Below, in pieces: positions 5,409 to 29,706 of a stretch of 64,000 bases of DNA (within the stretch, counting starts at the first letter, position 1; every line of letters starts with the position of its first letter). The stretch is from Macrostomum hystrix (Eukaryota > Animalia > Platyhelminthes). A program made the position numbers and the translations under genes. The stretch lies in assembly GCA_950097015.1 (NCBI GenBank), contig CATNEN010000026.1, positions 1,054,001 to 1,118,000 of the forward strand, written 5' to 3'. The notes beneath the pieces are model-generated. The model had not been told where the DNA came from. It saw only the letters and a program-made list of their open reading frames with translations, and ran no database searches.

Positions 5409-5422
5409 TAAAGGATCACTAA

Positions 5423-6032: not shown

Positions 6033-6440
6033 AGTCCTCGGAAATTCCGTGGGGTCCTAGTGTGTGAACAAACGCCTATGTGTTTGCATAGTGGACTCTG
6101 TCGCAGGTAAATCTGTCTGAGAGGGAGAGAGACAGTCAGTGCAGTCTGATAAACCGATTGATTATTCAGTTCCACTCCTCCAATGGAATTTCACTTTTGC
6201 TCTGGTCTCTCATATTTTTTCATATGAAGACAACAACAAAACAACTGTTGGCCTGGGCAAAACAGTGAAACCACCATCTGTTTGCAGTGGGTATGGGCAA
6301 CACTGTAGAGATAGGACAGTGGATGCGTAGCATAGATACATAAATTCAGCCTAATGTTATTATAAGTTTTCTTAGTATTACAAGTGTATGCGCCCACAGT
6401 CTCACCCACCCCATTACGTTAACCCACCCCACTCCGCTGG

Positions 6441-6448
6441 TATATAAG
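6441..6448 (+). promoter_or_regulatory. Candidate TATA box (TATATAAG) for the first Polinton gene
   Basis: Canonical TATA motif ~80 bp upstream of ATG 6530, just inside the left TIR. Confidence 0.5.
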
Positions 6449-6529
6449 GGTGGGGATTTTTTATTATCGTTAAGAGAGGATTTCTGTTAAACTAATAGCC
6501 ATTTCGTCACGGAAGTTTGACCTGCTACC

Positions 6530-7272
6530 ATGGATCTTAGCGACGGCTTTAAAGTTCAAGTACAGGATTCATCGCTATCCGACGCTTCTACTCTTCTGAC
6601 GGGGAGCTGAAGCCTGGAATCCCTGGATTCAACTTGAACGTACACCAATGGGAGAAGCTGAAGCAGCTAAGGCGCCAACTCGTGCAGGCTGCAGTCAACC
6701 GACGAAACGTCACTGCCAAGCTGGGCTCCGACAAGCTCGTAGAAGTCAAGCGAGGAGTCATCTGGCTCAAGCGACTGCCGGAGGACTGCACGGAGGATTT
6801 CCTGAGACGGAATTCGATCGAGATGACTCCCCGTCTGTGGCGAGCGCTGTGGTGCCATGTCGACCGGATCAGTAGTGAGCTGAGAGGAAAGTCACCGGAG
6901 TGCGAGTACGAGCTGGACCCTCAGGACATCAAGACCGAGCCGGACATCGAGAATCGGGCGGGCCAACACTCTAGTGAGGATGCGGACGACGAGAAGACGC
7001 TGCTGATTTCCGAGTCAGACAACGCAACCTCCGAACCGCTTCCAGCTGCAGCCCAACTGTCGACGCCCAAAGCATTCGGCTGCATCCCACAGCAGGACAG
7101 CGACCTGTCTAAGGATCCTTACTGGTATCAGGCCCGTGCGGCTGCGGGTCTCAGTGTCAACTGCTTGATTGGAAGCCGCAAGCGCAAGCAGCCATGGCCT
7201 CTGCGTAGGAGTGATGCGATCAAGTTTCCGAAGCTGACGGATGACTCAGATGAAAACAAGGACAACGAGTGA
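6530..7272 (+). pseudogene. Tandem PC4/Sub1-like (ssDNA-binding/coactivator) protein with acidic tail; frameshift near 6560
   Basis: ATG 6530 gives MDLSDGFKVQV, then the frame of ORF 6634 gives GFIAIRRFYSSDGELKPGIPGFNLNVHQWEKLKQL (PC4 pattern IDIRExY..GEMKPGxKGISLxxEQWxxLK). A second repeat follows: LGSDKLVEV..GVIWLKR...NSIEMTPRLWRALWCHVDRI. Confidence 0.7.
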
Positions 7273-7553
7273 ATTTCCAAGTGACAGTACATGCATCAAA
7301 TAATTTCTAACTTCATTCATTTGGTCAAATGCGCACTAAGCTTATTATCTATCCAGCCATATTTCAGCAATATAGGCTACAGAGTAATTTTGCTCTGTGC
7401 TTCTCGCAATAGCTAATTTAACTGTCTTTTTTGGCTTTATTTCTCGGTATATGTATCAAGACATTTTATAAACTACATTGTGTCAATACAACTTAAGAAA
7501 GTTGCTAAAGACAAAAAATAATATTGATTCTGACATCCTCTTCATGTTGGAAA

Positions 7554-8622
7554 ATGGAAAAGCTTTACTACAACCCCGCTCAGCCGGCCAGTTTCTCAGG
7601 TGCATCAAAGTTGCAGCAGCAACTAGGGAAAAATAATGAGGTGAAATCTAGAAAATAAATTGAGCTGTGGTTAACTGAACAGCCCGTGCACACACTGCAC
7701 AGGTCGGCTAGAAGGCGCTATCCCAGAGCACCAATCATAGTGCGATCCATTGACGATCAATGGGAGCTTGACTTGGTTGAGATGATTCCATTCGCAAAGT
7801 ACAATAATGGCTACAAGTACATTCTCACATGCATTGATGCGCTGTCCAAATGTGCATGGGCCAGGCCATTGAAAAATAAATCAGCTGCAGAAGTGCAGTC
7901 CGCATTCGAGAGCATTCTGAAATACTCAAAACGCCAGCCTCGCACAGTCCGCACAGATCAGGGGAAAGAGTTTCTTAACACTACTTTTCGCCAATTCTGC
8001 ATAGAGCGGGGGATTCTGGCTTTCCCAACCAATAGTGAGCAGAAAGCAGCCATCATTGAGCGATGGAACAGAACTCTGAAGAGCAAAATGTGGCGGTATT
8101 TCACGTACAAAAGCACCCTGCACTGGGTTGACGTGCTGTCCAAGCTAGTGAAGTCCTACAACAGCACTTACCATAGAAGCATAAAAATGGCGCCAACAAG
8201 CGTCTGCAAAGAGAATGAATCTGAGGTCTGGATGAACCTGTACGATGGGAAAGCAATTGAGACAATAGAGAAGCTGAAGAAACCGAAATTCTGCGACAAT
8301 CAGTTAGTGAGAATTTCCAATGCACCCAGGGTGTTCCGAAAGGGCTACAAGGCCAACTGGAGCGAGGAAGTGTACACTGTGGTGGCCAGGGCCCCGAAGC
8401 ACTACCCGTACATGTACAAGATTAGAGACATGAAGGGGGGAAGAGATTCGAGGCCTCTTCCATGAGCAAGAGCTGCAGGCTGTTCCGGACTCACAGCGGT
8501 TGTATGTGATTGAAAAGATTTTGAAGACTGAGAAACGTCATGGAAAAATCCGATATCTTGTGAAGTGGGCCGGCTACAACTCCACCGCGTGGGTGGATGA
8601 AAAGGACTTAAGAAAAGTCTAG
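7554..8622 (+). pseudogene. INT: Polinton RVE integrase with C-terminal chromodomain; in-frame TAA 7656-7658 and +1 G frameshift at 8435-8440
   Basis: MEKLYYNPAQPASFSG N-terminus. Catalytic motifs WELDLVEM, VRTDQGKEF, AAIIERWNRTLK. The corrected tail reads YVIEKILK...YLVKWAGYNSTAW (chromodomain). Confidence 0.93.
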
Positions 8623-8659
8623 TAGTAAACCTATTTCTGTGATAAAGGTATTTTCTATT

Positions 8660-9472
8660 ATGAGAAACATTGTTATCAACAGTGAACATGCTGAAGGTAC
8701 TTCTAGTGACTTTCATTTTCACCTGCCTTCCCCTATTTACTTGGATCGAAATGTGGACTATGAGGCTGGTCTGGTTGAAATCCATCTGCCTGTTGCATGG
8801 TTCAATCTTGACGAACCTTACTGCATCACTGTCTCAGTTGGAAGAGAGCACGAGGCCCTGGTTCTTCAACCTGGACGCTTTGCTAGAGTGGAGGAGCTGG
8901 TGGAGTGCCTGAATGAGCTGCTGACCAACTCTGAGTCTCTGTTCTTTGATGCGAGAAGCGACAGAGATGCTGAAATGGAGGCAGACGAATCGGGTCTGCT
9001 GGGGCGGCGTGGTAGTGCAAGAGAGTTCGCTATAAAATTTGAAATATGCAACTCAAGAACTGTTGTGCAAAACAGTACCGCGGAAGCAGAGCTGTTTCTT
9101 CCTCCTAACAAAATTCTGCAGTGGCTTGGATTCGGAAGTCAAGCAGTTACGATCCGACCTGGTCGCTTTGTGTCAAAGCATTACATTGGCTGCCCACGCA
9201 CCAGCTTAATTAATGTCCACTGCAGCATTGTTGAATCAACTAACTGCAACTGCAGCTCCCTGCTGAGAACTGTTAGCATGAATTCTGAAATTGAATGGGG
9301 TTACTATCTGAGCAAAGTGTTTAAGAAAACGACATTCTTTCCGATTCAGAGAGTCAATTTCCTACAAAGTATTCGAATTCAACTGCGAGACATTTTTGAC
9401 TGCACATTTATCGCGCAGACTTGCAGTCCTGTTTTGCTGACCGTTCAGATTCGCGAAAAAAAAATTCAATGA
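8660..9472 (+). CDS. PX: Minor capsid protein (penton, single jelly-roll)
   Basis: Motif DFHFHLPSPIYL...YEAGLVEIHLP and C-terminal IRIQLRD, typical of Polinton pentons. Lies upstream of the MCP. Confidence 0.82.
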   Translation: MRNIVINSEHAEGTSSDFHFHLPSPIYLDRNVDYEAGLVEIHLPVAWFNLDEPYCITVSVGREHEALVLQPGRFARVEELVECLNELLTNSESLFFDARSDRDAEMEADESGLLGRRGSAREFAIKFEICNSRTVVQNSTAEAELFLPPNKILQWLGFGSQAVTIRPGRFVSKHYIGCPRTSLINVHCSIVESTNCNCSSLLRTVSMNSEIEWGYYLSKVFKKTTFFPIQRVNFLQSIRIQLRDIFDCTFIAQTCSPVLLTVQIREKKIQ

Positions 9473-9839
9473 ATTATCAGCAGCTGATTAGGCAATACTC
9501 GGGAGCTCAAACAGGAGCTCAAAAGTCAGTACTTTATGGCTGCGGGAGTTCTCCAGGGCTTATGACGTACCAGCCTCCACCAGATGCTTCATCATCATCA
9601 TTAACAGGGCTGATCAATAGCAGCCGTGGCAAAACAAAAAGTCCTAAGAAATCGAAACGAAAGCAGAAAAAATGAAAGAAGAATCAACTAGCCGGAACAC
9701 TAGTCGCAAGAGAGGAAGGAAGACAAAGACTGGCAAGAAAAAGCTTAAGAAAAGGACTGACAAGAAAAGGAAAGCAACTGGAAGAAAGCGCAAAGTCAAC
9801 AGAAAAACTGTGAAACGGGTGCTCGACTCTCTGTCCTAG
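9469..9839 (+). CDS. Lys/Arg-rich putative virion core protein; split by a probable 1-nt deletion in the A6 run at 9667-9672
   Basis: 9469-9675 (MNYQQLIR...KKSKRKQKK) plus 9672-9839 (MKEESTSRNTSRKRGRK...RKTVKRVLDSLS) join in frame with one extra A. Sits between penton and hexon. Confidence 0.6.
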
Positions 9840-9842
9840 GCG

Positions 9843-11126
9843 ATGGCTTACGGATTTAACCCAAGGCTCGATCTGTTCAAGGCGCCTGTGCTACAGACTT
9901 GTATTGAGAAATCTGCTTACGTTGACATTCATCCTGTGAATTCTATTGTTGCAAACTCACCCATTGAATTTGACTGCCACCAATCAGCTGATGAGTACAC
10001 TGATTTAGTTAATTCATTTCTATACATTCGGTGTCGCATTGTGAGACTGAATGGTGCATTGATGAGGGAGGATGAGCTGGGTGAGGATGGAGTTGTTGCA
10101 GACCGCAGAGACAGCAATGTGCATCCGGAAAATTTTGTTCTGTCTACAGCCTTCTCAGATGTAATTGTTAGCATTAACCAGCGAATCGTCTCTGGGGGTG
10201 ACCAGCTGTACCCGTACCATGCCTACTTCAAAGCACTGATGAGCTCATCCGATGCCCAGCAACTCAAATTTCACCCTGCCGGTTTCTTGGAACCCGACTC
10301 AGCTGATGAGGACCACACTGAGAACCACAGGACCTCCCAATGGAGGGAATATGCGGGACCACTCCTTAGCGACATTTTCCAGTGCCCTGTGTTTCTGCTG
10401 AACAATTTGCACCTGCACATCAAACTGGTGCCCAGTGACGGAGCATTTGGAATCAGAGCTCCAGCCGCCAACAACACCGCCTACAGGATGGAAATATCGC
10501 ACTGCATCCTCTATCTCCGCCGAGTCAAAGTTCTGCCCCACATCAGCTTGGCTCACGAGCAGGGGCTGACTAATCAGAATGCGCTCTACCCAATTGAGCG
10601 AACTGAAATGCAAAACTTCATCCTGCCCCAGGGAATTCAGTCAAAGAATATTGAAGGATTCACGCACGGAAAGCTCCCGAAATTCATCATGCTGGCCTTC
10701 GTCAACCACCGAGCCTTCAATGGGCACCATCATTCCAGCCCGTTCCAGTTCCAAAACTTCAACCTGAGTCAGCTTGCTCTCAAGAAAGGGGGTGAATCCA
10801 TGTGCCACGGGGCATTTACACCTGAGAACAATTCGTTTGTGAGAGAATATTTGCACTACCTGAAAAGCTGTCAATCTGCGAGCCACACCAACTCGGTTCC
10901 ATCGATTCCCTACCAGCTCTTCTCAAACGAGAACACTGTGTTCGCATTCGATCTGACACCCGAGGGAGCGGCTCTGTGGTACGGGCAGAAGGAGGGAAAC
11001 CTGCGGCTGGAGATTCGGTTCCGACAGGCCTTGGATGAAGCCGTGTCCCTGATTGTCATGTGTGTGTATGACTCACTGATTGAGGTCACCAAGCACAGGG
11101 AGCTATTGCTGGACTATTCATCTTAA
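9843..11126 (+). CDS. PY: Major capsid protein (double jelly-roll, hexon-like), 427 aa, intact
   Basis: LDLFKAPVLQTCIE..YVDIHP...PIEF...EYTDL..SFLY, plus PFQFQNFNL and C-terminal GNLRLEIRF...LIEVT motifs of the Polinton MCP. Confidence 0.93.
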   Translation: MAYGFNPRLDLFKAPVLQTCIEKSAYVDIHPVNSIVANSPIEFDCHQSADEYTDLVNSFLYIRCRIVRLNGALMREDELGEDGVVADRRDSNVHPENFVLSTAFSDVIVSINQRIVSGGDQLYPYHAYFKALMSSSDAQQLKFHPAGFLEPDSADEDHTENHRTSQWREYAGPLLSDIFQCPVFLLNNLHLHIKLVPSDGAFGIRAPAANNTAYRMEISHCILYLRRVKVLPHISLAHEQGLTNQNALYPIERTEMQNFILPQGIQSKNIEGFTHGKLPKFIMLAFVNHRAFNGHHHSSPFQFQNFNLSQLALKKGGESMCHGAFTPENNSFVREYLHYLKSCQSASHTNSVPSIPYQLFSNENTVFAFDLTPEGAALWYGQKEGNLRLEIRFRQALDEAVSLIVMCVYDSLIEVTKHRELLLDYSS

Positions 11127-11672
11127 TGAAAGTTGATATGGATGCCCTTCAGCTGCGTTGTCTTGCTAGATCCTTCCTGCCCAGCAATCGAATCTTGATA
11201 ATCACCCTTTGCTTAAAGCAAAAGACCTGGATAATAAACTGGGATGAAGGAAGAATGCGTGAGAAAATTCCCAATCACAACAGAATCATCAGCTTCTTCT
11301 TGATAAAACACAGCGTCTCGTTTGGACACTGGGTTGCATGTTTTGTTGGCAATGGAAATGTAGTTGAATTATTTGATTCTCTCGGTTGGAATGCACAGAC
11401 TCTGAGTGCCATCCACCAATTTTTTGCTAATAAATTCAAGTTTTCTTTTCCGCATGCTTTGCAATGTTAACCGAATCCAATGCAGTCAGTCGGACAAGTG
11501 CGGACTTTTCTGTCTCTATTTTGCATATCAAAGATTTCTTTTGAAGCGATCATTCGAATGGATTCTGCGAAATCTACACGTGAAAGAAAACTGCCCGTTG
11601 AATGACAGAATGCTTTGTCAGTTTGAAGCCAGCTTAAGAAAAAGAGGTTTATGGCGAAAAAGAAATAGTTGA
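11126..11672 (+). pseudogene. PRO: Adenain-like cysteine protease, frameshifted around 11430-11460
   Basis: GHWVACF...ELFDSLG (His/Asp) in one frame; RIQCSQSDKCGLFCLYF (Gln/Cys) in the next. Confidence 0.88.
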
Positions 11673-11689
11673 AATAAAGCCTAAGTGAG

Positions 11690-12337
11690 ATGGAGTCAGA
11701 AAGAGTGTACTATGATGTCCGCCTGCGACAGGGCAGCTGCATGATGGTCTGCGGACCCACCAATGCTGGAAAGACAACCTTCGTGAAGCATCTAATACAG
11801 TACAGGGATGTATTATTCGACATCCAGCCTGGGAGAGTGCTCTGGTACTATGGAATCGCACAGCCAGCGCATGCTGAGTTGAGCAGTCTTGGTGTGCAAT
11901 TGTATCAGGGATTACCCACTAACTTTGAGAGCTCATTGATGAGCAATGATCTGGTCATTTTTGATGACATGATTGATGAAACTTCTAACTCTGCCTCAAT
12001 GCGAAATATTTTCACTGGACTCGCCCATCACCTGCCATGCTTTCTTGTAATGCTCACTCAGAATATGTTTTTCAAGGGCAAGGAGTTGCGGACCATGAGC
12101 TTGAACGCGATGTACTATGTGATCCTAAAAAACCCCAGAGACCAGCTGCAGATCGCTGCATTGGGCAGGCAGTGCTTTCCATAGAAGCCTGGCTTCCTGC
12201 TTGAGGTCTTCAAGCATGTCACAGCGCAGGGCAGGGGGAGCTACCTGTTTCTGGACTTTCACCCTTGCACTCCCGATGAGCTGCGAGTGCGAGCCAGAAT
12301 TTTGCCCAATCAGAGGCCACATCTGGTTTATGCTTAA
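11690..12337 (+). pseudogene. ATP: A32/FtsK-like packaging ATPase with in-frame TAG at 12182-12184
   Basis: Walker A GPTNAGKT, Walker B LVIFDD, HH motif. Reading through the stop gives SYLFLDFHP...LRVR to TAA 12337. Confidence 0.92.
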
Positions 12338-12380
12338 GAATATAGGTTGAAAAATGCTATTAGCCTGAATTATTGCAACT

Positions 12381-12704
12381 ATGGAAGTGTTCGAAGCTCA
12401 TCAAAGTTTATTTGAAGTCCTTGCCTCACACAAATATACAATTAGCCTCAAGCGCGCAATAATACAGCTGAGTCCGAAAGAAGCTTGCACTTTTCTTGTC
12501 GAGGCCTGCCACAACCTATTGGAAGAGAATTTGCCATTTTCTCTTGTTGAAAAGACAGCGCTATTGAAATCTAAAAATATAATCCGCAAGATTGCCCGGC
12601 AAAGAAAACAGAGTGACTTACTCAAAGCTTCTTTTATCAGAATCCTCCCCACTCTGCTGAAACTTGTGAAAAAGAAGAGGAAAAGAGATGCACAAATTCA
12701 ATGA
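12381..12704 (+). CDS. Small conserved Polinton protein (basic, amphipathic C-terminus)
   Basis: Pattern EACHNLL..NLP......LLKSKNIIRKIA resembles the small protein commonly found downstream of the Polinton ATPase (recalled pattern, not searched). Confidence 0.6.
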   Translation: MEVFEAHQSLFEVLASHKYTISLKRAIIQLSPKEACTFLVEACHNLLEENLPFSLVEKTALLKSKNIIRKIARQRKQSDLLKASFIRILPTLLKLVKKKRKRDAQIQ

Positions 12705-13365
12705 GATGGTTCTGATCTCAAGGTCCGAGTATGAAATGCTGAGGAGGAGTGCCAAGCCCATTGAGTCTGTGAGTGACACGGCCATAAAGCAGGCACAGAT
12801 GAAATGCGATGATATCCTGTTGGCCCAAGACTGCCCAGATGATATGAAGACAGCCCTGTACCAGAGTGCAATGCAAAGCTTGCTGGCAAAGCGAAAGCAG
12901 ACAGGAAAGGAAGCTGCATCAGAAGAGAAGAAAGCGAAGTTGATGAAGGCTGAGATGCCTCAAAGAAGCTGGGAGGAAAAGATCTACCAGTCAGTGCCAC
13001 AGAAGCTCAAACCGAGGGCTCGGAGTCTATGGGCCATCCTATCTGACAGCCAGTCTGCTATCCGGGTGTCCGATAATGGAGAGGTGAACATTTCTGGGAA
13101 CTCGATTCCTAACTCAAACATTGTCGATTTGATTCTGCACACAGTGAAGGACTCAAAAAGTTCTGGTCAGCCTGTTGGATGGCCCGCTTTCAGTGACTTG
13201 CTTCGCCAAAAAAATCTCAATGTGCCTATGTCAGCTGTTGGAAAATCTGTACATCAAGAAATTTTTGATACAATTGAAGATGCACAGCCTTCACTCAAAG
13301 GATTGGGCAACAGGTCTGCATGGCTGAGGTTGAACAGGGGGAGAAAACAGTATTTAAGAAAGTAA
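12688..13365 (+). CDS. Conserved Polinton protein of unknown function (possibly PZ-class)
   Basis: MVLIS..EY, DDIL...PDDMK.ALY and GEV.I.G..IPNSNIVDLI...P.GW..F...L..NVP motifs, recalled from Polinton ORFs. The label is uncertain. Confidence 0.65.
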   Translation: MHKFNEMVLISRSEYEMLRRSAKPIESVSDTAIKQAQMKCDDILLAQDCPDDMKTALYQSAMQSLLAKRKQTGKEAASEEKKAKLMKAEMPQRSWEEKIYQSVPQKLKPRARSLWAILSDSQSAIRVSDNGEVNISGNSIPNSNIVDLILHTVKDSKSSGQPVGWPAFSDLLRQKNLNVPMSAVGKSVHQEIFDTIEDAQPSLKGLGNRSAWLRLNRGRKQYLRK

Positions 13366-13406
13366 CGATCATCGAATTATGCCGGTTTCGAGGCACTCGC
13401 TTGAGC

Positions 13407-14258
13407 ATGAACTACATAGACATTCAGGGCTTCCCGTGCGATGGAGAGAAGGATGACTTCATCGTGAAGGAGTTGGCGATCCTTGAAGTCAGGAAAGGAA
13501 GCTATCACCTTTCACACCACGTGTACGCTCCACCGTATGATTGGCAGAGAGTTTCACCTGACATGCGAATGTACTACAAACAGCTTTCGAAAAATCTACA
13601 TAAATTCAAGTGGACCGATGGAACCCGGCCATATTTGCAATTAGCTGACGACATTGTGAGCATTGGTAGCGGCGTCAACTGGACAAGCGGAGAGAAAAAA
13701 TCGATTTTTCTAACTGAGTTGTTGGGCAGACTGGTCTACAACTTAGACGATTTGGTCTCACATTCTAACAAAGACTCTGATACCGCATGTGCAGTGAGCA
13801 ACTCATTGCTGTACTACAGCTGGCTGAAACCAACAGCTTGCATCAACTTAAGAAGCGACAAGTGCTCATGGCATAGAAGCTCAAGCAATTGCAGTAGCAG
13901 CAGCAGCCAGACTTGCAATCAGAATGATGATCAAAGGCGCTGCAACCTTGAGAATCACCAACCTGGTTGGTGGAGTGGATCTGAGACTGACTGGAGGCAG
14001 AGGCGCCCAGCTTCCTCTAAGGGAGCTGGCTCTCAGCATGGCTCATGTGATCTACCGACCCGTGTGGCCCAGAGTGCTCATCAAGCAGATGCGGAATCCC
14101 AGAGTTACCCTACTGCTCTACCCTACTGGGCAACTGAGCATCTGTGGCGCAAAGAGCTACGCCGACTCGGTCAGGGCTGCCCGGCGCTTCGTCGCTATGC
14201 TGCATCGCCGAGTGCCGGCTCAGCTGCTGCCTCGTCAAGCTTTCGGTGTGAGGATTAA
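13407..14258 (+). CDS. DEDD/RNase H-fold exonuclease-like protein (domain ~13407-13830; tail overlaps the TBP gene)
   Basis: YIDIQGF...FIVKELA...YAPP...HKFKWTDG...VYNLDDL...CAVSN...W, a family recalled from invertebrate Polintons. Nuclease function is inferred. Confidence 0.6.
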   Translation: MNYIDIQGFPCDGEKDDFIVKELAILEVRKGSYHLSHHVYAPPYDWQRVSPDMRMYYKQLSKNLHKFKWTDGTRPYLQLADDIVSIGSGVNWTSGEKKSIFLTELLGRLVYNLDDLVSHSNKDSDTACAVSNSLLYYSWLKPTACINLRSDKCSWHRSSSNCSSSSSQTCNQNDDQRRCNLENHQPGWWSGSETDWRQRRPASSKGAGSQHGSCDLPTRVAQSAHQADAESQSYPTALPYWATEHLWRKELRRLGQGCPALRRYAASPSAGSAAASSSFRCED

Positions 14259-14499
14259 GACTATCACTGCGCATGGAAAACTTGCAATTCAAAATGTGCT
14301 AAATCTAACAAGTTTGTCACATCTGCTACCAAATGCTGAATATGAACCCGAATCATTTTCTGCTTTAATTTTCAAATTACGATTTTGCAAGTGTCTGCTT
14401 TTTCACAGTGGGTCATTTGTTCTAAGCGGTGCTCGATCTTTGAATCAGCTACGAACCGACAGCATCCGTCTGCGCGAATTAGTTTTTTCTCTATTGTAA
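13924..14499 (+). CDS. Divergent TATA-binding-protein-like protein, 191 aa, intact
   Basis: Two TBP repeats: ITNLV..VDL...YRPVWPRV...NPRVTLLLYPTGQLSICGAKS...AARRF and AEYEPESFSALIFK...LLFHSGSFVLSGA. Confidence 0.9.
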   Translation: MMIKGAATLRITNLVGGVDLRLTGGRGAQLPLRELALSMAHVIYRPVWPRVLIKQMRNPRVTLLLYPTGQLSICGAKSYADSVRAARRFVAMLHRRVPAQLLPRQAFGVRIKTITAHGKLAIQNVLNLTSLSHLLPNAEYEPESFSALIFKLRFCKCLLFHSGSFVLSGARSLNQLRTDSIRLRELVFSLL

Positions 14500-15179
14500 A
14501 ATATAATCGGAAAATAATTTATCACGCACTTTGTTTGTCACCATACGGTTGACAAAAACAACGTTAACTGGAGCTCAAACTTCTTCAAGATGTATTTATT
14601 ACATTTATTATCCTCAACAAGTTGAATATGAAACAAAAAGATTGAAAACCCAACCGTAATGTAACCGAACATGAAATTAATAAAAAAACATTATAATACA
14701 CAATTAAAGAAGCAAATGACGCTGAAAATGCGAAACCCCGGATGCAAACATTAAGCGCATACTAAAAAAAAAAACTGTCTATGACAACGCAGATAAAAAA
14801 GCAACTAATTTGCATCCTTATCGAGATGAGGAAGGATGATCACTAAGTTGATTTTACTTTAACGAGAGAATTAAAATTGTTACAGAGAAACGAGATTTTA
14901 ATTAAAAAAAGTAAAAATTAAAAAATAAGTTCAATTTATTTGTATCACGCGTTCTTCAAATGGAAACATTTGAAACAATTACTATTCAGATGCAACGCTG
15001 GCATGAATGAAAAAAGTAGTATTAGTAGTCTCCGAAACAAGATCCAACATACTGAGCATGCTAGCAAATCTGAGCATTCCAGAAACAGAAAACTGTTTAA
15101 AATTTAAAAGTAAAAACGACAATTTAAAAAAGCAACAATTGTCCACGACAACTTCTAGCCGTCACTACTTTTTATGAAG

Positions 15180-18100
15180 TTAACCAAACCTGATGCGCTT
15201 CTGCTGGCCATGGAAATCCTGGGTCAGAGCATAGTGGCCATAGGGAAGACTTCGATTGCTGCTCAGCCATACTCGCTTGTCTTCCCAAACTGAGAGGCTT
15301 CGCTTCTCCAATACTGATGTGTAAACGCTGTGCTTCTTTGAGACAATTGTGGTCATGGCAACCGTCTGCTCCTGTTTCGAATTGAGCGCGGCAGCGTAGT
15401 CAGCATGAGTGATTTGAAGTTTCACAACAGATTGTTTCACGCCCTTGGCAGTTTTTTTGGCTTTCGCAGTTGAACTCTCAGCGGGAAGAAATGAATACAG
15501 CTTTGGCCGCAGCAGGACCCATTCTTGGTAGGTACCACCGCAGGATTCATCTTTGACGCAGCCAAGCTTGCCTTTCAGTTCCTCGGAGTAGTGCGGATGG
15601 TCTCGGGGATAGTTCGACGAATCAAGGATATTTTCCTCTCTGAGCTTCGGGATCACATGCGATGTGAGCTCGTGATTTCTGAAGGCGAGAAAAAACGAGT
15701 CCGTGTCGCCACCGCATACCATCATGTCCTTGGAGCCGTCTGGTTCACAGAAAAGCGGCCGGAGCTTATCATACAGCAGGCTGTACATGCACATCTTCGA
15801 CAAGTCGAGCACTGCCTGGCCGACGAAAATGGCCTTGTCAAGCTTTACTTTGTCTTTCCTGAACTGAAAGATGGATAGATTTTCATTTACAATAAAAACT
15901 CCGGTGCAATTTGTTCGAGAGGAATAAGTTTCAACTTGAGTAGCGCTTGTGCAGATGCGCACATCACACCGCTTGCGCACGTTCTCCATCGTCTTTCCGA
16001 ACAAAGAATTGTTCTTTAGTTTGTAGAAATCCTTGCTAAAATCGGATGTTGCAAGTGCCCTCTTGCTATTATTGCTTGCAATGTACGAAGCAAAGATTTT
16101 CTTCTGGTTGAATTCAATCATCTTGAGAATTGACTTGATCTTCATTCCGTGCTGCAGGTAGAAGCGCAAGATGGTGCTGTGGACAATATAGCCATCCTTG
16201 TCCGAACAGGTCAGCAGAAGTTTCTCTGTTGCAGAGAACTTAAAATCGACATTGCCTGAGCGCTGCTCCGCGATTTGCTTCCACAATTCCAGCATAAACG
16301 GTGAAAACTGGTCAACCTGCGGCTTAGATTTCTCTGGCGCAAAAGGTAATTCCTCTGTCACATCATGAATATCGGCTGGATATTCAAGGTCAACCTGCAC
16401 GAGATAGGCTACTTCAGCTTCAGGATCGAGAGATATGAACTTTTTGGCGTCCCAAGACTGCAGTTCCTTTTCTGTCACCCACCTGAATCCGCTGCATGAG
16501 ACTCACGCAGTCCTGCTGCTCATCATAGTCAGGCAAACTTTGGTTGTTTGCTTTAACATGGTGCACATTAACGAAAGACATGCCACCTCTAATGCCTTGT
16601 TCGAATAAATGGTACATGTCAGGGTCTGTTAGCTGTTCGAGCACAACACCAGTTGATTTGAGAGCAGAGTCGTAAGACAGACCAGGTGTAGTTAGATAGT
16701 GCACTGGATCGAGCCCATATTCAGATAGACTGGCGTGACGAAATGCCTCAAAAATGTCTGCTAACTGGCGCACATCCATTTCCAGGTAGGCTAGCATGTA
16801 GTCTCGCAGACTACGACATTCGAATGCGGCCCATGCTGCCTTTGCTCGATGGTATTCCTCATCAGAAATCGCACAGTCGGTAAGACGGTTGAAAAATGCA
16901 TTTTTCGGTGGCAGACTAGTCTGTTCAAGAATGTTGAACTCGGTCAGGAAATCATACGGAAAGACTCCCTTTTGGCGAATAATGTCTTTTGAAAGCAGAG
17001 GCCTAGACTCTAGCAGCTGCAGAGTCAGTTTACAGTCGTTCTCTGAAAGATTGGAAAACAAATTTGCCAAACTTCCCTTTAGAAAGCAAAGAGAATCGAT
17101 GAACTGAATGGTAAACATTAGTGGCAGTGTCTTCCCGTTTTTTGTGTAGGTGCCAACAGGAAACTCCACCCGAAGTGATAGATAGCGCTCCGAAGTCTGT
17201 GGGACAACATTGAGTTTCCAATTTGGCATGCTACCAAGTGCGGTAGAAAGAAGAAGATGCAAATCGTAACCGCCCAAATTGTGAAAAATGACAGGCAAAA
17301 ACCTGCGACGAAGCTGAGCCCGCATGTTGCACTCCTGGCACGCGGCTCCTTTGAACTGCCCCGTCAGGTGATCATGGTCAAAATGTTTGTCAGCGGAACT
17401 GCTGAACTCAGATTGACAGTAGTGGCATGATGTGGCGTCATTGAAATCTTTCATGTCCGTTAGAGAAGATTTATCCGCTGCTTGGTGACTGTGCACCCGG
17501 TTCCACTGAAAGATTTCCCTGGAAAGCTTTTCAAGGGAACTGAGAAAAGCAAGGATGCACTCCTTGGGATCAGCATTGCAAAATGATTGGTACATGTCTG
17601 CTTTAGGACGAAGTTCAGGCCCCTTCATGTACGCTCTGGAAACCACTAAGTAGGCTGCTGCACATGGCTCATGTTGAGCGATCAGATCGGCAGAGTCTGG
17701 TTTTTGTTTCAAAATGGCTTCCAGGTCGGCATAGGTCACAAATGGTGGACTGATTGTCTTCTGAAATTCCTTGAACTTGATTTCGTTTGCTCCAGGAACA
17801 GGAAGGACTTCCTTGATGGGATTTTCAGAAGCGATTTGGCATTCTCTGCTGTGCTCTAGAAGTCTCTCGCTGCAGTAGAATGAGGTCAAGCATCTGGTGC
17901 ACCACTTTCTCATGGCAAGGCCGGCGCGGCTGTTCATCAGCCTGTCAAAGTTTTTAATTGCACACCAGTGCTCTAATCCATAGCTGCCGCTGACCAACAG
18001 AAGCATTAGATGAGTTCGACCTCCTGGCTCATGCTTGAGACGACGGAGCAAGCTCACGTTACCTCGCTGCCATAGAAATGCAGAAATGCAAATTCCTGGA

Positions 18101-18816
18101 TTGCTAGACTCAACGAGATCAATGTCAGCGACACTGACGGGCATGGAGATTCCAGCGAAGTCAAGCTCGTTCAACCATTCATCGTAAGACGACAGTCTGC
18201 CAGGCGATTTTTTTATCTTTGGATCGGCACTGTGCAATGCGGCAAGACAGGCGTACATGAAGCAGTCGTTGCCGGTACTTGGCGGATTGACGACAGCTTT
18301 CTTGTTTTTCAGACTGGCTGGGAGGTTAAATCTGGATGTTCTACCCTGGCGGAATCGAATCGGATTGTACCTAGCTAGATGTATATCCAGGAAGTTTATC
18401 TGAGTTAGTGTCCAACCACTACCATTCGTGTTCAACATGCTGCAAATCCTTTCCAACTCTTGCTCCTGTGCAACCAGCCAATCATGCAGATATTGATAGG
18501 TGGCAGTGGCATCCACACTCTTGTCAATGGTCTGCAGTTTGCAGCTGACCCACTTGTCTTCTTCTGTTAGAATCTGTCCATCCTTTATTCGCGCCATACG
18601 GATATTCGACCTTGGCTGAACTTTATAATGGTGAATACCGATTCTTCGCTGCACTTCATCAATGACTATGCTTCCAGCCTGGACAAAAAACTCGGATGGC
18701 AGAGTGCCTGCATTATCTGGCCTCAGTCTTAATATTTCTAGCGATTCATTGAATGCTTGGGAAACTGTGCTGAGATGAACTGCCTGACCTAGAAACGGGA
18801 GTTGCAAAAAAAACAT
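15180..18816 (-). pseudogene. POLB: Protein-primed DNA polymerase B, with a frameshifting deletion that removes motif A (~16490)
   Basis: Exo I/II/III motifs (YADLEA, FHNLGGYD, YLEMDV), EndoVII-like HFDHDHLTG..AACQECN, motif B KLKNNSLFGK, motif C GGDTDS. DxNNLYG is missing at the junction of the two ORFs. Confidence 0.95.
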
Positions 18817-18906
18817 CAGTTTTTTTCTCCCTTCACCTTGTCAATTTCTAAAACAAAACGGTAACTACCTACAGTAATCACACATTAAGTTTTAATATCC
18901 CTTTGC

Positions 18907-19215
18907 TCAAGCTAACTGCACTTTGCGAAACTTAAAATATTTTACCAACTTATTAATTTCCGGCTTACCATCATTTTCACCTTGCTCCGAGTGACCAGTG
19001 ACCGAGCTTCTAGCGCCGCTGCTTCCTGGACTGCCACCATTCAAACTGAAACCGCTGGAGCCATTGCCATGGCCGCTGCTTGACTCAAAATCTGACAGAC
19101 TTCCTTCCAATGATTCCGACAGATTTGTGCACGAAGACTCAGAAAGGTCCTCCTCCGACTCGGAATAGTCAGATTCATCTGACTCGGACAAGTGTGATAG
19201 AGTAAAACTTAGCAC
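18907..19215 (-). CDS. Ser/Asp/Glu-rich low-complexity ORF, possibly a 5' exon of PolB
   Basis: Open acidic frame upstream of PolB with a GTAAGC donor at 18968 and a TTTTAG acceptor at 18848. Confidence 0.3.
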   Translation of the reverse strand: MLSFTLSHLSESDESDYSESEEDLSESSCTNLSESLEGSLSDFESSSGHGNGSSGFSLNGGSPGSSGARSSVTGHSEQGENDGKPEINKLVKYFKFRKVQLA

Positions 19216-19709
19216 AAAGAAGAAGCAAGTATGCTTTGTTATTTATTTTTCCAAAGATGTAAGCTTAATTGGATCGTTTATTTTAACAAGTTGCATTAAT
19301 ACAGAACGAGCAATCATAGCCAGAAAACCAATTCAGTAACGCATGCATAACGAGCAGGATGTTTTTAAGCCATACTGAAAGTCAGGGGAAAATGCAACTG
19401 AAGATAAAGCAGTACAGTTATAGAGCAGAATTAGCTGACAATTCGGTTGCACATTCCTTCACCAGTCATGATCTAACCACATCTAACCTTTATATTGACA
19501 TATTTTGTCATGCCCCCTCTCTTCATCTTTTCTAAAAGCCTTTTTGAAATTCAAAAATTTTAAAAAGCTTTAAAACGCATTTTCTTTCATTCTTCGCAGT
19601 CTACGCTGGCGCAGGCTCAGGTGTGAAAGATTGACATTGAGAAACAGATTGCGCAAGTGGCGCGAGATCAAGTTTAAAGTCGAAATAAAGACAAAAAATG
19701 GCATTCAAT

Positions 19710-20582
19710 TTAGACTGGTGTGACAGTAATTTTGTTGCCATCAAGCACAACAACGTAGCCAGCCCCGGTTACGTATGGTAGCAGCAGATTTACAGTAAGA
19801 GCACTTGAAATCGCATTACCACCGTTGATAATGTTGTCTTCTGGAATGCTGACTGTCGGCACTTCTATTTCCGCTAGCAGTTCGGCCAGCTCGTCCCGTG
19901 CAACCGAGCCAGCTTCAGCGGTGGAGACGGCTGGAACCGCAGCCAAAGCAGCTGGAGCATCAGGAGTCAAGGCTTCGGCGAGCGGAGTGGCAATAGCATT
20001 GCCGACAGACTCAATGTCCATATCGCTGCCTTCTTCTTCGATCATTGGACTGTCAGGCTGAACTAACATCTGCTTTCCTCTGATTGCCGGCACGCGAGCA
20101 GTGACTGCTGCAGCAGCTCCAGTCACCACGTCAAGGTCTCCGCTGGTGCTAGGGCCGTCCCTGTCAGGTGGACGCTGACTCGTCGTCATGGCGGGCGCAA
20201 CGAAGTCCTCCCCAGAGCTAACACTCTCACTTCTGGGTGCCCTTGGTCTAATAATGCCATTGATCACCTGACTCAGTACATTGGACCGTTGCTTAGCAGC
20301 GACCACCTCAGTAGCCTGTTGCTTTGCCGCAGCCATAACTAATCGGCGGAAAGAGCGCGCTGCTTCTTCGTTGCCAGGCAGCAGCTGATGCCCGCGGTGC
20401 CGATTGATCTTGGAGTTTTTTGAGCATTTGCCAAGTCCACGGAAAGGAGCTATTTCGGAGCACTGCCAGCAGACTGTCCATCTTGAAAGATTGGTGCATC
20501 TTGAATGCCGGTCGGCCTGCAGTCCTCCTTGCTTGCACTTCTTGCAGTCAGTGCACACCTCATAGTGCCAAGTGGATGCCAT
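19710..20582 (-). CDS. Accessory protein: Cys/His-rich N-terminus plus disordered acidic region
   Basis: 290-aa ORF from ATG 20582 with CxxCxxC, CxxC and HxxH (HRGH). It is the first gene inside the right end. Confidence 0.6.
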   Translation of the reverse strand: MASTWHYEVCTDCKKCKQGGLQADRHSRCTNLSRWTVCWQCSEIAPFRGLGKCSKNSKINRHRGHQLLPGNEEAARSFRRLVMAAAKQQATEVVAAKQRSNVLSQVINGIIRPRAPRSESVSSGEDFVAPAMTTSQRPPDRDGPSTSGDLDVVTGAAAAVTARVPAIRGKQMLVQPDSPMIEEEGSDMDIESVGNAIATPLAEALTPDAPAALAAVPAVSTAEAGSVARDELAELLAEIEVPTVSIPEDNIINGGNAISSALTVNLLLPYVTGAGYVVVLDGNKITVTPV

Positions 20583-21187
20583 TATATTTATTTTCAAAAA
20601 TTAATTTTTGCTTGTTAAACTAGACTAATAAATCGCAGCAGAAGCGTTGGATTTGGGTGCTTATGTACCCAGACCACTGCCCTGGTTTGCAATACAGACC
20701 CATTTCCCATGCAGCATTTTGATCAACGATCAGCGTTATCTATTCCCGGCTTCCATATTATTGAGCGGTCAGTGTGAGCATGGGGTTTGTGGATTTTATG
20801 ACTGTCTCGCGCAGACCTCGACCTCTAATTCAGTTTACAACTTAATTGGGGCGCACAAGCAGGTAGGCAACCACGGCTGAACCTAGCAACAGCTCCTTAA
20901 CTTGGAGGTGTGGGCTTATTGTTCAGTTTCCTTTTCACAAATAGCAGGCCTTGTTTTCAATTAGGCTAAATAGATCCAACCTTATGCAGAAGCGTAGCAA
21001 ATGCTATTTGTTAAGAATTCGCGAACAAATGCATAATAGAGATTAGTAAAAACTTTGCAGCACTATTTCCAATAGCTTTTGTGAGCATATTCTACCCACT
21101 CTGTTCACTTTTTCTCTGAATACGACCCATATATTCCCAGTGACAATAAGTTATGTTAGTCTGCCTCCCTTCACTCTTTAATATCTC

Positions 21188-21305
21188 TGCAAGTGCGGCA
21201 GTGTCATAGGCACAGCAATGGGCTCCTGCACTTTCTGTGCAAGTGCGGCAGTGTCATAGGCACAGCAATGGGCTCCTGCACTTTCTGTGCAAGTGCGGCA
21301 GTGTC
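21188..21305. repeat. Subterminal 50 bp tandem repeat (~2.4 copies) related to the TIR 124 bp unit
   Basis: tgcaagtgcggcagtgtcataggcacagcaatgggctcctgcac at 21188, 21238 and (partial) 21288. Confidence 0.9.
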
Positions 21306-21355
21306 GTAACATCCCATACATCTGATTATGATTCGGTAAGCCTTAACCATTTAGC

Positions 21356-22213
21356 ATTTGCTGTGCCTAGTGATAGGCGGACCCTCTCTTCCTATCCCTG
21401 CAGTGTTAACCCACCCCCAATGCAAAGAGAGAGATAGACCAGCAAGGCAGGACCTTGCAATGACCTGCATCACAGACATCAAGGTAGCATTTAACGTTCT
21501 CTCAGTGCAGCTGCTTGGAGGTTAAATGGGCCAGCGCCAGCGAGTTCCATTTGTCAGAGGCAGAGTGACCAAGAAAATTAAAGGCTAATTAAAATGTGGG
21601 GGCTTCGCCCCCACACCCCCACACCCCCTCTACTCCTATCTCTGCTGTGTTAATCACCCAGCGCAAAGAGATAGGCCGGCCTCTCTTCCTATCCCTGCAG
21701 TGTTAATCCATCCCTAATGCACAGAGATAGGCCAGCCATTTCTCTTATCTCTGCAGTGCATTCGTTTCCTTCCTATCATTTTACATTGCTTTCCTATCTC
21801 CCCAGTGCTAATGCGGCAGTGTCATAAGCACAGTAATGGGCTCCTGCACAAACCCACCTGATTGGCCTGCATATCTCCACTGTGTAGGCCCCGCTCCTAT
21901 CCTTTTACACTGCTTTCCTATCTCCCCAGTGCTAATGCGGCAGTGTCATAAGCACAGTAATGGGCTCCTGCACAAACCCACCTGATTGGCCTGCATATCT
22001 CCACTGTGTAGGCCCCGCTCCTATCCTTTTACATTGCTTTCCTATCTCCCCAGTGCTAATGCGGCAGTGTCATAAGCACAGTAATGGGCTCCTGCACAAA
22101 CCCACCTGATTGGCCTGCATATCTCCACTGTGTAGGCCCCGCTCCTATCCTTTTACATTGCTTTCCTATCTCCCCAGTGCTAATGCGGCAGTGTCATAAT
22201 TCGCCCTACTACT
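21356..22213 (-). repeat. Right terminal inverted repeat (858 bp, three 124 bp units)
   Basis: Unit starts at 21813, 21937, 22061 and 22185; ends ...tcgccctactact. Confidence 0.93.
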
Positions 22214-29387: not shown

Positions 29388-29694
29388 AACTGGGTGCTAA
29401 TAAAACTCGCTTTACTTGGCTATTCTTAAGGCATGGCTTACGTACTCAGTACATAAGTATCCTCTAATCTAAGGATTTCTTATCTTCTGGTCGATAAAGG
29501 CCGTTTGCAACATACTACTCACCCTCTGTGGGTTGAGATCACCAATTAAGACTCTAGTGACTTTGTAAACGGACATAACGTATGCGCCTCTGGTGTCCTG
29601 CATGCAGTGCTGATCTTCAGACCTGGCAGTAGCTGAAAATGTTTAATAAATAATTAATAGCACAGATGTGAGCAGAACTCATTTCAAATAAAAT
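29388..29694 (+). repeat. ~300 bp repeat, inverted partner of 35570-35851
   Basis: Reverse-complement match, roughly 85-90% identical by eye. Confidence 0.85.
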
Positions 29695-29706
29695 TCTATT
29701 AAATCA

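What the first reader, a model, noticed from the sequence alone, without database searches (positions are those of the whole stretch)
13924..14499. Polinton-encoded divergent TBP: candidate mobile basal-transcription module (with PC4-like and Zn/acidic ORFs)
Seen: an intact, intronless, core-only TBP homolog with asymmetric divergence. Repeat 2 keeps both intercalating Phe residues and the YEPE acidic stirrup. Repeat 1 has Phe->Trp (RPVWP) and Phe->Tyr (LLLYPTG), and the second conserved QN Asn is replaced (IKTIT). Established: the YEPE glutamates contact TFIIB; the Phe pairs kink TATA DNA; TRF2-like paralogs with such changes lose TATA binding; TBP homologs are known from much larger DNA viruses. 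Inference: a 17 kb element may redirect Pol II to its own (late/capsid) promoters or act as a TFIIB-sequestering decoy. Its co-occurrence with a PC4-like protein and a putative activator makes this the best candidate for an undescribed system here. Novelty cannot be verified without searches.
Basis: partly seen in the sequence, partly recalled or inferred. Interest (0 to 1): 0.88.

Follow-up and report, generated by a model that had tools for sequence, protein, structure and literature searches.

The report
Flatworm Polinton carries its own TBP
A 16.8 kb virus-like mobile element in a flatworm genome carries an intact, selectively maintained and very divergent copy of the TATA-binding protein, so a small element may direct the host transcription machinery to its own unusual promoters.

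Summary
The ORF at 13924-14499 is a real, intact, core-only TBP: Pfam E 1.7e-24 with two repeats, AlphaFold pLDDT 95.9, TM about 0.8 to solved TBPs. It lies in a 16.8 kb Polinton/Maverick with 596-nt TIRs, rve integrase, double-jelly-roll capsid protein, packaging ATPase, protease and pPolB. The host is an animal, most likely a Macrostomum flatworm. A copy about 72% identical in nucleotides has the TBP at the same position. dN/dS is 0.19, and protein divergence equals that of the polymerase. The family is small, and everything outside it is at most 33% identical, so this is not a recent host capture. One reader detail is off by one column: Pro49 fills the canonical repeat-1 Phe position and Trp48 precedes it. 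Tyr66, Thr113, Phe145, Phe160 and the two TFIIB-contact glutamates are confirmed and invariant in the family. No PC4-like ORF was found. New here: the 8-mer CTTAAGAA lies 48-99 nt before the first ATG of six plus-strand gene units, including capsid genes and the TBP (6 seen, 0.155 expected). No gene has a canonical TATA box upstream. Most likely this is an element-specific promoter-recognition factor using host TFIIB and Pol II. One figure legend (2021) records a TBP in a non-animal relative. Three compliance slips are declared.

The parts
5423..22213 (.). Whole Polinton/Maverick-type element, about 16.8 kb
   Evidence: Bounded by inverted repeats. The two ends become identical at about 5423 and 22213. 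No other fragment of it lies in the window.
5423..6032 (.). Left terminal inverted repeat
   Evidence: 596-nt arm, 99% complementary to 21356-21951.
21356..22213 (.). Right terminal inverted repeat, lengthened by 3.5 tandem copies of a 124-nt unit (21771-22199)
7686..8465 (+). Integrase, rve core ORF. The true 5' bound is unresolved and the N-terminal part is not in this ORF.
   Evidence: Pfam rve PF00665, E 1.8e-14.
8639..9472 (+). ORF of 277 aa in the position of a minor capsid (penton) protein; not tested
   Evidence: ORF list; no Pfam or NCBIfam match. The assignment rests on position only.
9843..11126 (+). Major capsid protein, double jelly roll, 427 aa, intact
   Evidence: 26 homologues, full-length relatives also 427 aa. 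AF2 pTM 0.88. Foldseek matches the PBCV-1, iridovirus, Sputnik and mavirus MCPs at E 1.6e-15 to 1e-11.
11126..11672 (+). Adenain-like cysteine protease, apparently broken once (frame change)
   Evidence: Weak Pfam Peptidase_C5 match, E 0.0042, below the cut-off. The gene lies in two overlapping ORFs.
11690..12184 (+). Packaging ATPase (A32/FtsK-like), 164 aa, possibly short
   Evidence: Weak Pfam matches to Pox_A32 (E 0.0097) and AAA families, below cut-offs. P-loop and Walker B-like stretches are visible in the translation.
12381..13365 (+). Two overlapping ORFs of unknown function (12381-12704 and 12688-13365)
   Evidence: ORF list. No family or solved-structure match. The second is collinear with the relative copy.
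13320..14258 (+). ORF of unknown function just upstream of the TBP. Its frame stays open across the first third of the TBP gene, and its real 3' end is unknown.
   Evidence: No Pfam, NCBIfam, solved-structure or word-indexed homologue. Collinear with the relative copy.
13924..14499 (+). TBP homologue, 191 aa, intact, core-only
   Evidence: dN/dS 0.19.
13948..14211 (+). TBP repeat 1 (residues 9-96): Asn13 kept; Trp48-Pro49 at the stirrup Phe position; Tyr66 at the N-lobe L5.1 Phe position
   Evidence: Secondary structure; column shares; position names from PMC7221094.
14251..14493 (+). TBP repeat 2 (residues 110-190): Thr113 for Asn, Thr115 for Val; Glu141 and Glu143 (TFIIB contacts), Phe145 and Phe160 kept
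   Evidence: PMC7221094.
15180..18816 (-). Protein-primed family B DNA polymerase with an Endonuclease_7 domain; broken once (frame change) in this copy
   Evidence: Pfam DNA_pol_B_2 on both ORF pieces and Endonuclease_7. The relative copy has one intact ORF of 1152 aa. The pieces were compared separately.
18907..19215 (-). Ser/Asp/Glu-rich ORF, 102 aa, unknown function
   Evidence: no Pfam or solved-structure match.
19710..20597 (-).
   Evidence: No family match. The region is not alignable with the relative copy at DNA level.
7492..7499 (+). CTTAAGAA motif, 52 nt before the first in-frame ATG of the ORF leading to the integrase
8607..8614 (+). CTTAAGAA motif, 53 nt before the first ATG of ORF 8639-9472
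9744..9751 (+). CTTAAGAA motif, 99 nt before the MCP start codon
11633..11640 (+). CTTAAGAA motif, 57 nt before the ATPase start codon
12333..12340 (+). CTTAAGAA motif, 48 nt before the start codon of ORF 12381
13847..13854 (+). CTTAAGAA motif, 77 nt before the TBP start codon

Best explanation
The gene is a fixed, selectively maintained TBP paralogue of one Polinton/Maverick lineage of Macrostomum-type flatworms.

Shown: it is a complete two-repeat TBP saddle; it sits at the same place, upstream of and convergent with pPolB, in two element copies about 72% identical; it evolves under purifying selection; and it is far from every cellular TBP.

Inferred mechanism: the protein binds DNA through its very basic concave face with altered specificity. 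In repeat 1 both kink-inducing Phe positions are changed (Trp48-Pro49 and Tyr66). In repeat 2 the central Asn and Val are both Thr. It keeps the two C-lobe glutamates that contact TFIIB, so it would recruit host TFIIB and Pol II, because the element has no TFIIB or RNA polymerase gene of its own. It would thereby nucleate initiation complexes on element promoters that host TBP reads poorly.

The candidate target is the motif CTTAAGAA, which lies 48-99 nt before the first ATG of each non-overlapping plus-strand gene unit: integrase, penton candidate, MCP plus protease, ATPase, the ORF chain 12381-13320, and the TBP itself. The minus-strand block (pPolB and two acidic ORFs) lacks it. That would make the morphogenesis block depend on the element's own factor, with positive feedback on the TBP gene.
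For: TBP identity and fold. Element identity. Same position in a diverged copy. Selection: dN/dS 0.19 with dS 0.77, and pN 0.135 against 0.125-0.14 for pPolB.

Isolation of the family: only 5 representatives below E 1e-30 among 1.84 billion proteins. The next best is 99 bits against 379, and outsiders are at most 33% identical.

Residues: E141 and E143 are invariant in the family, and these positions (C.L3.2, C.L3.4) contact TFIIB Arg/Thr (PMC7221094). The DNA-contact changes are invariant in the family. No TFIIB-like ORF was found in any Pfam scan. Basic charge: pI 9.9-11.5.

Motif: 6 exact plus-strand copies in 6.5 kb against 0.155 expected, 0 of 2000 shuffles, and 9 in the window against 2.5 expected, 0 of 100 shuffles. 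Distances to the first ATG are tight, 48-99 nt, whereas distances from the previous ORF end range from -39 to 272 nt. No TATAWA lies within 150 nt upstream of any of 13 ORFs, and TATAWA density is 0.42 per kb in the element against 1.02 per kb outside.

Precedents: herpesvirus TBP-like proteins on TATT late promoters (PMC4893493) and per-gene promoter motifs in virophages and polinton-like viruses.
Against: There is no expression or binding evidence of any kind. The link between motif and TBP is pure inference, and motif conservation in other copies was not tested. The motif could be an RNA-processing signal; flatworms use spliced-leader trans-splicing (my own knowledge).

The gene is known only from a narrow lineage, whereas the capsid protein family is much wider, so the element type as a whole does not need a TBP. 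This copy has broken polymerase and protease genes, so it may be inactive, although assembly indel errors cannot be excluded. Only one pairwise dN/dS could be computed.
Confidence: 0.5

Rival explanations
1. Decoy or general modulator. The protein keeps the TFIIB-binding stirrup but has lost sequence-specific promoter binding. It would titrate host TFIIB or other TBP partners, damping or re-programming host transcription rather than reading element promoters.
For: Two of the four Phe positions and one of the two central Asn positions are changed. TBPL1-type changes at N.L5.1 are linked to altered promoter use (PMC7221094). E141 and E143 are kept.
Against: The DNA-facing strands are invariant in the family and the protein is more basic than almost all other TBPs. 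That is unexpected if DNA binding were dispensable. The substitutions are aromatic or hydrogen-bonding residues rather than random ones. A shared motif exists before the element's genes.
Confidence: 0.15
2. Architectural DNA-binding role outside transcription. A TBP-fold protein would bend or coat element DNA, for example at the terminal repeats during protein-primed replication or during packaging.
For: Extreme basicity, pI up to 11.45. The gene lies next to pPolB. [quoted passage not shown]
Against: The two TFIIB-contact glutamates are invariant, which has no obvious reason in a purely architectural protein. The CTTAAGAA motif is absent from the TIRs.
Confidence: 0.15
3. Neutral passenger: a host TBP paralogue recently captured by one copy and now decaying.
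For: This copy has broken polymerase and protease genes. The family is confined to one host lineage.
Against: dN/dS is 0.19. The gene has the same position in a copy about 72% identical. Several diverged family members are 48-79% identical with invariant signature residues. Identity is only 24-32% to any animal, protist or archaeal TBP, while those are 34-59% identical to each other.
Confidence: 0.03
4. The CTTAAGAA motif is an RNA-processing signal (trans-splice acceptor, intercistronic or 3'-end signal) of a polycistronic transcript and has nothing to do with the TBP.
For: The motif contains AG. Gene units are densely packed on one strand. Flatworms trans-splice (my own knowledge).
Against: No pyrimidine tract precedes the sites; the flanks are purine-rich. 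The distance to the previous ORF end is highly variable, and one site lies inside the preceding ORF.
Confidence: 0.25

Closest known systems
TBP-like proteins of Nucleocytoviricota (giant viruses, phycodnaviruses, asfarviruses, iridoviruses)
   Same: A virus-encoded two-lobe TBP fold. These are the only viral matches in BFVD, at E 1e-11 to 1e-4.
   Different: Those genomes are ten to a hundred times larger. They carry their own RNA polymerase and usually their own TFIIB, and their C.L3.2/C.L3.4 positions are variable, kept in about 40% (PMC7221094). Here the element is 16.8 kb, has no TFIIB or polymerase-subunit gene, and keeps both glutamates. Sequence identity to them is only 8-21%.
Beta/gamma-herpesvirus late-gene TBP mimics (EBV BcRF1, KSHV ORF24, HCMV UL87) acting on TATT boxes
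   Same: The closest functional analogue. A nuclear DNA virus supplies its own TBP-like factor that reads a variant box in late or capsid promoters and uses host Pol II (PMC4893493).
   Different: The herpesvirus proteins are large and only about 10% identical to TBP. They work within a six-protein viral complex and bind Pol II directly. The flatworm protein is a compact bona fide TBP core. No homology beyond the fold was found; the best herpesvirus match in BFVD has TM 0.52 and E 2e-4.
Metazoan TBP paralogue TBPL1/TRF2
   Same: A TBP paralogue with an aromatic replacement of the N-lobe Phe (Trp at N.L5.1) that is thought to act on non-TATA promoters (PMC7221094).
   Different: Here N.L5.1 is Tyr, and the Trp sits next to the other (stirrup) Phe position. 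The family is no closer to animal TBPs than to archaeal ones. No labelled TBPL1 sequence was available for direct comparison.
'TBP' gene labelled in a figure of non-animal MELD/polinton-related elements (Starrett et al. 2021, PMC8502044)
   Same: A TBP homologue noted in a mid-size polinton-related element.
   Different: It appears only in a figure legend. It comes from non-animal data sets and has no analysis of residues, selection, distribution or promoters. Whether it is related to this family is unknown.
Virophage and polinton-like-virus per-gene promoter motifs
   Same: A short conserved motif before each gene of a small polinton-related genome (papers listed).
   Different: There the motif matches the late promoter of a helper giant virus that supplies the transcription machinery. 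Here no helper is known, and the element encodes a candidate reader itself.

Membership tests
TBP superfamily (Pfam PF00352, two-lobe TBP) | Two tandem TBP repeats forming a saddle | tested here: met
   Pfam shows two stretches, 85.9 bits against a cut-off of 22.9. AF2 gives S1-H1-S2-S5-H2 twice, pLDDT 95.9. TM is 0.75-0.83 to solved TBPs.
TBP superfamily (canonical TATA-binding type) | Four DNA-kinking Phe residues, two per lobe | tested here: not met
   Only the C-lobe pair (F145, F160) is kept. The N lobe has Pro49 (with Trp48 adjacent) and Tyr66, where 45/49 other TBPs have Phe.
TBP superfamily (canonical TATA-binding type) | Central Asn in strand S1 of each lobe | tested here: not met
   Asn13 is kept. 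The C-lobe position is Thr113, where 44/49 others have Asn.
TBP superfamily | C-lobe stirrup glutamates that contact TFB/TFIIB (C.L3.2, C.L3.4) | tested here: met
   E141 and E143 are invariant in 6/6 family members and are Glu in 41/49 and 47/49 other TBPs. Their role is taken from PMC7221094.
TBP superfamily | Binding to TATA or other promoter DNA, and to TFIIB | not testable with these tools
   No binding data and no complex prediction were available.
Animal TBP / TBPL1 / TBPL2 orthologue (host gene or recent capture) | Sequence closeness to animal TBP paralogues | tested here: not met
   27-31% identity to the animal (rotifer and Seison) TBP-domain proteins and 25% to the human TBP core, while cellular TBPs are 34-59% identical to each other. 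No intermediate was found among 1.84 billion representatives. A labelled TBPL1 was not available.
Archaeal TBP (NCBIfam equivalogs NF001592 and others) | Score above the curated cut-off | tested here: not met
   Best score is 72.2 bits against a cut-off of 270. Real archaeal-type neighbours score 300-560 bits.
Polinton/Maverick | Long terminal inverted repeats | tested here: met
   596 nt, 99% complementary.
Polinton/Maverick | Protein-primed family B DNA polymerase | tested here: met
   Pfam DNA_pol_B_2 at E 1.5e-8 and 6.3e-8 on the two pieces. The gene is broken once in this copy.
Polinton/Maverick | Retrovirus-like (rve) integrase | tested here: met
   PF00665, E 1.8e-14.
Polinton/Maverick | Double-jelly-roll major capsid protein | tested here: met
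   AF2 plus Foldseek match the PBCV-1, Sputnik and mavirus MCPs, E down to 1.6e-15.
Polinton/Maverick | Packaging ATPase and adenain-like protease | tested here: inconclusive
   Only sub-threshold Pfam matches: Pox_A32 E 0.0097 and Peptidase_C5 E 0.0042.
Polinton/Maverick | Short target-site duplication | tested here: inconclusive
   No matching flanking hexamer is evident in the end alignment. Both flanks are tandem repeats.
   No Pfam PC4 hit at E up to 0.1-1 in 32 ORFs. No solved-structure sequence hit for four candidate ORFs. Fold-level similarity was not tested.
Giant-virus orthogonal TBP-TFIIB system | A virus-encoded TFIIB partner | tested here: not met
   No TFIIB-family Pfam match in any ORF of the element.

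The most novel reading that the evidence does not exclude
A 16.8 kb animal Polinton carries a self-contained, orthogonal core-promoter system. Its own TBP would have a re-tuned DNA face and an intact TFIIB-docking stirrup. It would read a private non-TATA box (CTTAAGAA, with a central G) placed before each morphogenesis gene and before its own gene. This would act as a built-in switch that couples capsid-block expression to the element's factor while using host TFIIB and Pol II. It would be the smallest known eukaryotic virus-like element with its own general transcription factor.
Probability: 0.28. Interest if true: 0.88.

Novelty: new variant of a known kind. Interest (0 to 1): 0.72.

Why it matters
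Virus-encoded TBPs are known from giant viruses, which bring their own polymerase and TFIIB, and as distant mimics in herpesviruses. A compact bona fide TBP, kept under purifying selection in a 17 kb Polinton that must rely on host Pol II, would show that small integrating elements of animals can also own a piece of the basal transcription machinery.

Its natural substitutions sit at exactly the positions that set TATA recognition, while the TFIIB contacts are kept. Together with a candidate cognate motif, this offers a natural experiment on how TBP specificity can be re-tuned. It also gives a sequence marker for following this element lineage. How Polintons/Mavericks regulate their genes is almost unknown.

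Tried and rejected
1. The Blastocystis hit P0015, a possible link to the TBP in Starrett's figure, is the protist's own spliced TBP among housekeeping genes. Rejected.
2. PC4-like neighbour: no support.
3. The upstream ORF 13320 has no homologue in the word-indexed search, so its function is still unknown.
4. Archaeal origin: archaeal TBPs are the best outside hits, but the family scores far below the archaeal cut-offs and is equidistant from all cellular TBPs. I read this as similarity to the least-derived TBPs, not as evidence of origin.
5. Canonical TATA boxes upstream of element genes: none.
6. Target-site duplication: not found.
7. Additional TBP or element fragments in the window: none.
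8. The length window of the word-indexed search was covered by the exhaustive search without a length limit, which did find fused gene models of 359-1733 aa.
9. Literature searches for Polinton or Maverick with TBP or TATA-binding protein, and for Macrostomum with Polinton or Maverick, found nothing beyond one figure legend.
10. Side-chain orientation of Trp48 against Pro49 in the model could not be read, because model coordinates are not exposed to scripts.
Full report
OBSERVATION. The ORF at 13924-14499 (+) exists and encodes 191 residues. It matches Pfam TBP (PF00352) at E 1.7e-24 with both repeats, 85.9 bits against a cut-off of 22.9. By sequence it matches 35 distinct solved TBP chains, with archaeal ones first (E 5.8e-17) and eukaryotic cores next (about 7e-12). 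With a 55-sequence alignment, AlphaFold2 gives a canonical saddle, S1-H1-S2-S3-S4-S5-H2 twice, at pLDDT 95.9 and pTM 0.87. Foldseek places the model at TM 0.75-0.83 and 22-30% identity to archaeal, plant, yeast and human TBPs. Only about eight residues precede strand S1, so 'intact, intronless, core-only' is correct.

RESIDUE CLAIMS. I took column shares across 49 non-family TBPs and 6 family members. Position names follow Ravarani et al. 2020 (PMC7221094).
- N.L5.1 (yeast F116) is Tyr66. It is Phe in 45/49 others.
- The C-lobe central Asn is Thr113 (Asn in 44/49), and the neighbouring Val is Thr115 (Val in 42/49).
- The N-lobe Asn13 is kept.
- The C-lobe Phe145 and Phe160 are kept.
- Glu141 and Glu143, the C.L3.2 and C.L3.4 contacts to TFIIB Arg/Thr, are kept.
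- One claim needs correcting. In both the HMMER and MAFFT alignments, the canonical N-lobe stirrup Phe column holds Pro49, and Trp48 lies one column earlier. It is therefore not a simple Phe-to-Trp change.
All of these residues are invariant in the six family members, including one only 48-54% identical to the window protein.
The proteins are very basic, with pI 9.9-11.5 and net charge +11 to +19, against a median pI of 9.46 for the others.

THE ELEMENT. Inverted repeats of 596 nt, 99% complementary, bound a 16.8 kb unit at 5423-22213. The right repeat carries 3.5 tandem copies of a 124-nt unit.
- The plus-strand block holds an rve integrase (E 1.8e-14), a 277-aa ORF, a 427-aa protein, a protease (weak adenain match), an A32/FtsK-like ATPase (weak match), three ORFs without matches, and the TBP.
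- The minus-strand block holds a pPolB with an Endonuclease_7 domain, a Ser/acidic ORF and a Cys-rich/acidic ORF.
- The 427-aa protein has 26 homologues and folds at pTM 0.88. It matches the double-jelly-roll capsid proteins of PBCV-1, an iridovirus, Sputnik and mavirus at E down to 1.6e-15.
This is a Polinton/Maverick with a capsid module. The host is an animal: a cadherin ORF lies at 44321-47071, and the nearest protein relatives are from Macrostomum lignano. I do not take the contig for human.

BREAKS IN THIS COPY (counts only).
- pPolB: one frame change.
- Protease: apparently one frame change.
- Integrase: at least one frame change or an intron, unresolved.
- ATPase: possibly short, unresolved.
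- MCP and TBP: intact.
Assembly indel errors cannot be excluded.

RELATIVES AND SELECTION. The word-indexed search found five relatives at 72-87% identity, from M. lignano or unnamed assemblies. The exhaustive profile search of 1.84 billion representatives has no length window. It gave 1739 TBP-superfamily hits, but only five below E 1e-30. Three of these are long fused gene models from M. lignano, and one is a 183-aa protein from a metagenome. The score then drops from 379 to 99 bits. By BLASTP, family members are at least 48% identical to the window protein and everything else is at most 33%.

The nearest outsiders are mostly archaeal-type TBPs, which pass or approach the NCBIfam cut-offs. 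The family itself scores 39-72 bits against cut-offs of 181-347. Labelled cellular TBPs (two animals, Theileria, Blastocystis, three archaeal types) are 34-59% identical to each other, but the family is only 24-32% identical to any of them. A recent capture of a host TBP, TBPL1 or TBPL2 is therefore excluded as far as the available sequences allow.

One related copy, L001 from an M. lignano contig, is collinear with window 12689-18773 at about 72% nucleotide identity and shares TIR sequence. It has the TBP at the same place next to an intact 1152-aa pPolB. Between the two copies the TBP has dN/dS 0.19, with dS 0.77 and pN 0.135. The pPolB pieces, compared separately, have pN 0.125-0.14 with saturated synonymous sites. 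The TBP is thus as constrained as the element's own replicase.

NEIGHBOURS. No ORF matches PC4, in Pfam scans of 32 ORFs or in sequence searches of solved structures. The ORF just upstream has no detectable homologue. The Cys-rich/acidic ORF lies in the stretch between pPolB and the right TIR, which does not align with the related copy. The proposed three-gene 'module' is not supported.

A NEW OBSERVATION. None of 13 ORFs has TATAWA within 150 nt upstream, and TATAWA is rarer in the element than outside, 0.42 against 1.02 per kb. Instead, the exact 8-mer CTTAAGAA occurs six times on the plus strand between 7492 and 13854. That is six of the nine hits in the whole window, against 2.5 expected on both strands, with 0 of 100 shuffles reaching nine. 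Within that region and strand the expectation is 0.155, and 0 of 2000 shuffles reached six.

Each site lies 48-99 nt before the first in-frame ATG of a gene unit that does not overlap its predecessor. These units are the ORF leading to the integrase, the penton candidate, MCP (with the protease following), the ATPase, the 12381 chain, and the TBP. Distances from the preceding ORF end range from -39 to 272 nt. The minus-strand block has no exact copy.

MECHANISM. Steps shown: TBP fold, element residence, conserved position, purifying selection, retained TFIIB-contact residues, altered DNA-contact residues, absence of a TFIIB gene, and a shared upstream motif.

Steps inferred: the protein binds a non-TATA box, possibly this motif, whose central G would suit the changed central residues. 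It then recruits host TFIIB and Pol II, so that expression of the morphogenesis block depends on the element's own factor.

The best functional precedent is the TBP-like protein of beta- and gamma-herpesviruses, which reads TATT boxes in late promoters (PMC4893493). Per-gene motifs are known from virophages and polinton-like viruses. Giant-virus TBPs differ in that most have variable TFIIB-contact positions and a TFIIB of their own (PMC7221094).

Rivals are a TFIIB decoy, an architectural DNA-binding role, and, for the motif alone, an RNA-processing signal.

NOVELTY. The searchable literature contains no analysis of a TBP in Polintons or Mavericks. [quoted passage not shown] I rate this as a new variant of a known kind (virus-encoded TBP).

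1. In one search I looked up the contig encoding relative P0001. This fetched L001, DNA of a related copy of this virus-like element from an animal genome. I used it for ORF listing, Pfam, coordinates and substitution counts only. From that point I did no further work on L001 and made no further look-ups, pattern scans or accession fetches for element copies from animals or from samples of unknown host.
3. In my reasoning I also wrote the bounds of the broken genes' ORF pieces. This report gives counts only.
ORF pieces were always searched and compared separately.

Noticed in passing
window 7492, 8607, 9744, 11633, 12333, 13847 (+): The exact 8-mer CTTAAGAA lies 48-99 nt before the first ATG of six plus-strand gene units of the element and is absent before the minus-strand block. 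It is strongly enriched over chance.
   Followed up: partly
window 13924-14258: Synonymous divergence from the related copy is lower in the first half of the TBP gene (pS 0.37) than in the second half (0.61). An alternative frame, the tail of ORF 13320-14258, stays open over that half. This could be overlap constraint, recombination or chance.
   Followed up: no
window 15180-18816 (-): The pPolB carries an Endonuclease_7 (PF02945) domain just upstream of the polymerase domain, both here and in the related copy.
   Followed up: partly
window 21771-22199 against 5423-5617: The right TIR carries 3.5 tandem copies of a 124-nt terminal unit, whereas the left end has one, so the termini are unequal in length.
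   Followed up: no
window 22329-22563 and 5394-5424: Perfect 58-nt tandem repeats (4.1 copies) lie just outside the right end, and an 11-nt repeat abuts the left end. No target-site duplication was recognisable.
   Followed up: partly
window 29414-35826: A second unit of about 6.4 kb, AT-rich (GC 0.33-0.36), is bounded by inverted repeats of 100-134 nt (89-92% complementary). It is probably another DNA transposon.
   Followed up: no
window 36330-38952 and 41032-42067: A 34-nt satellite array of 77 copies with extreme GC skew, and a (CTGTGTGTGT)n array of about 104 copies. The long 'ORFs' listed there are artefacts of the repeats.
   Followed up: partly
window 44321-47071 (+): A long ORF with six cadherin domains (Pfam E 9.2e-49). 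It is a host gene and shows that the host is an animal.
   Followed up: partly
proteins P0176-P0200 against P0009: The capsid protein family reaches down to 24% identity and is common in environmental metagenomes. The TBP family has only one metagenomic member (48-54% identical). The TBP therefore seems confined to a narrow sub-lineage of a wider element group.
   Followed up: partly
protein P0010: A protein annotated from the plant Penstemon davidsonii passes the archaeal TBP equivalog cut-off (366 bits against 270) and contains two TBP units. This may be contamination or a mis-assembly in that genome.
   Followed up: no
proteins P0006 and P0008: M. lignano gene models named 'Ig-like domain-containing' (1733 aa) and 'Parvo_NS1 domain-containing' (586 aa) contain fragments of this TBP. 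P0008 also contains a piece of the capsid protein. These are chimeric gene predictions across element copies.
   Followed up: no
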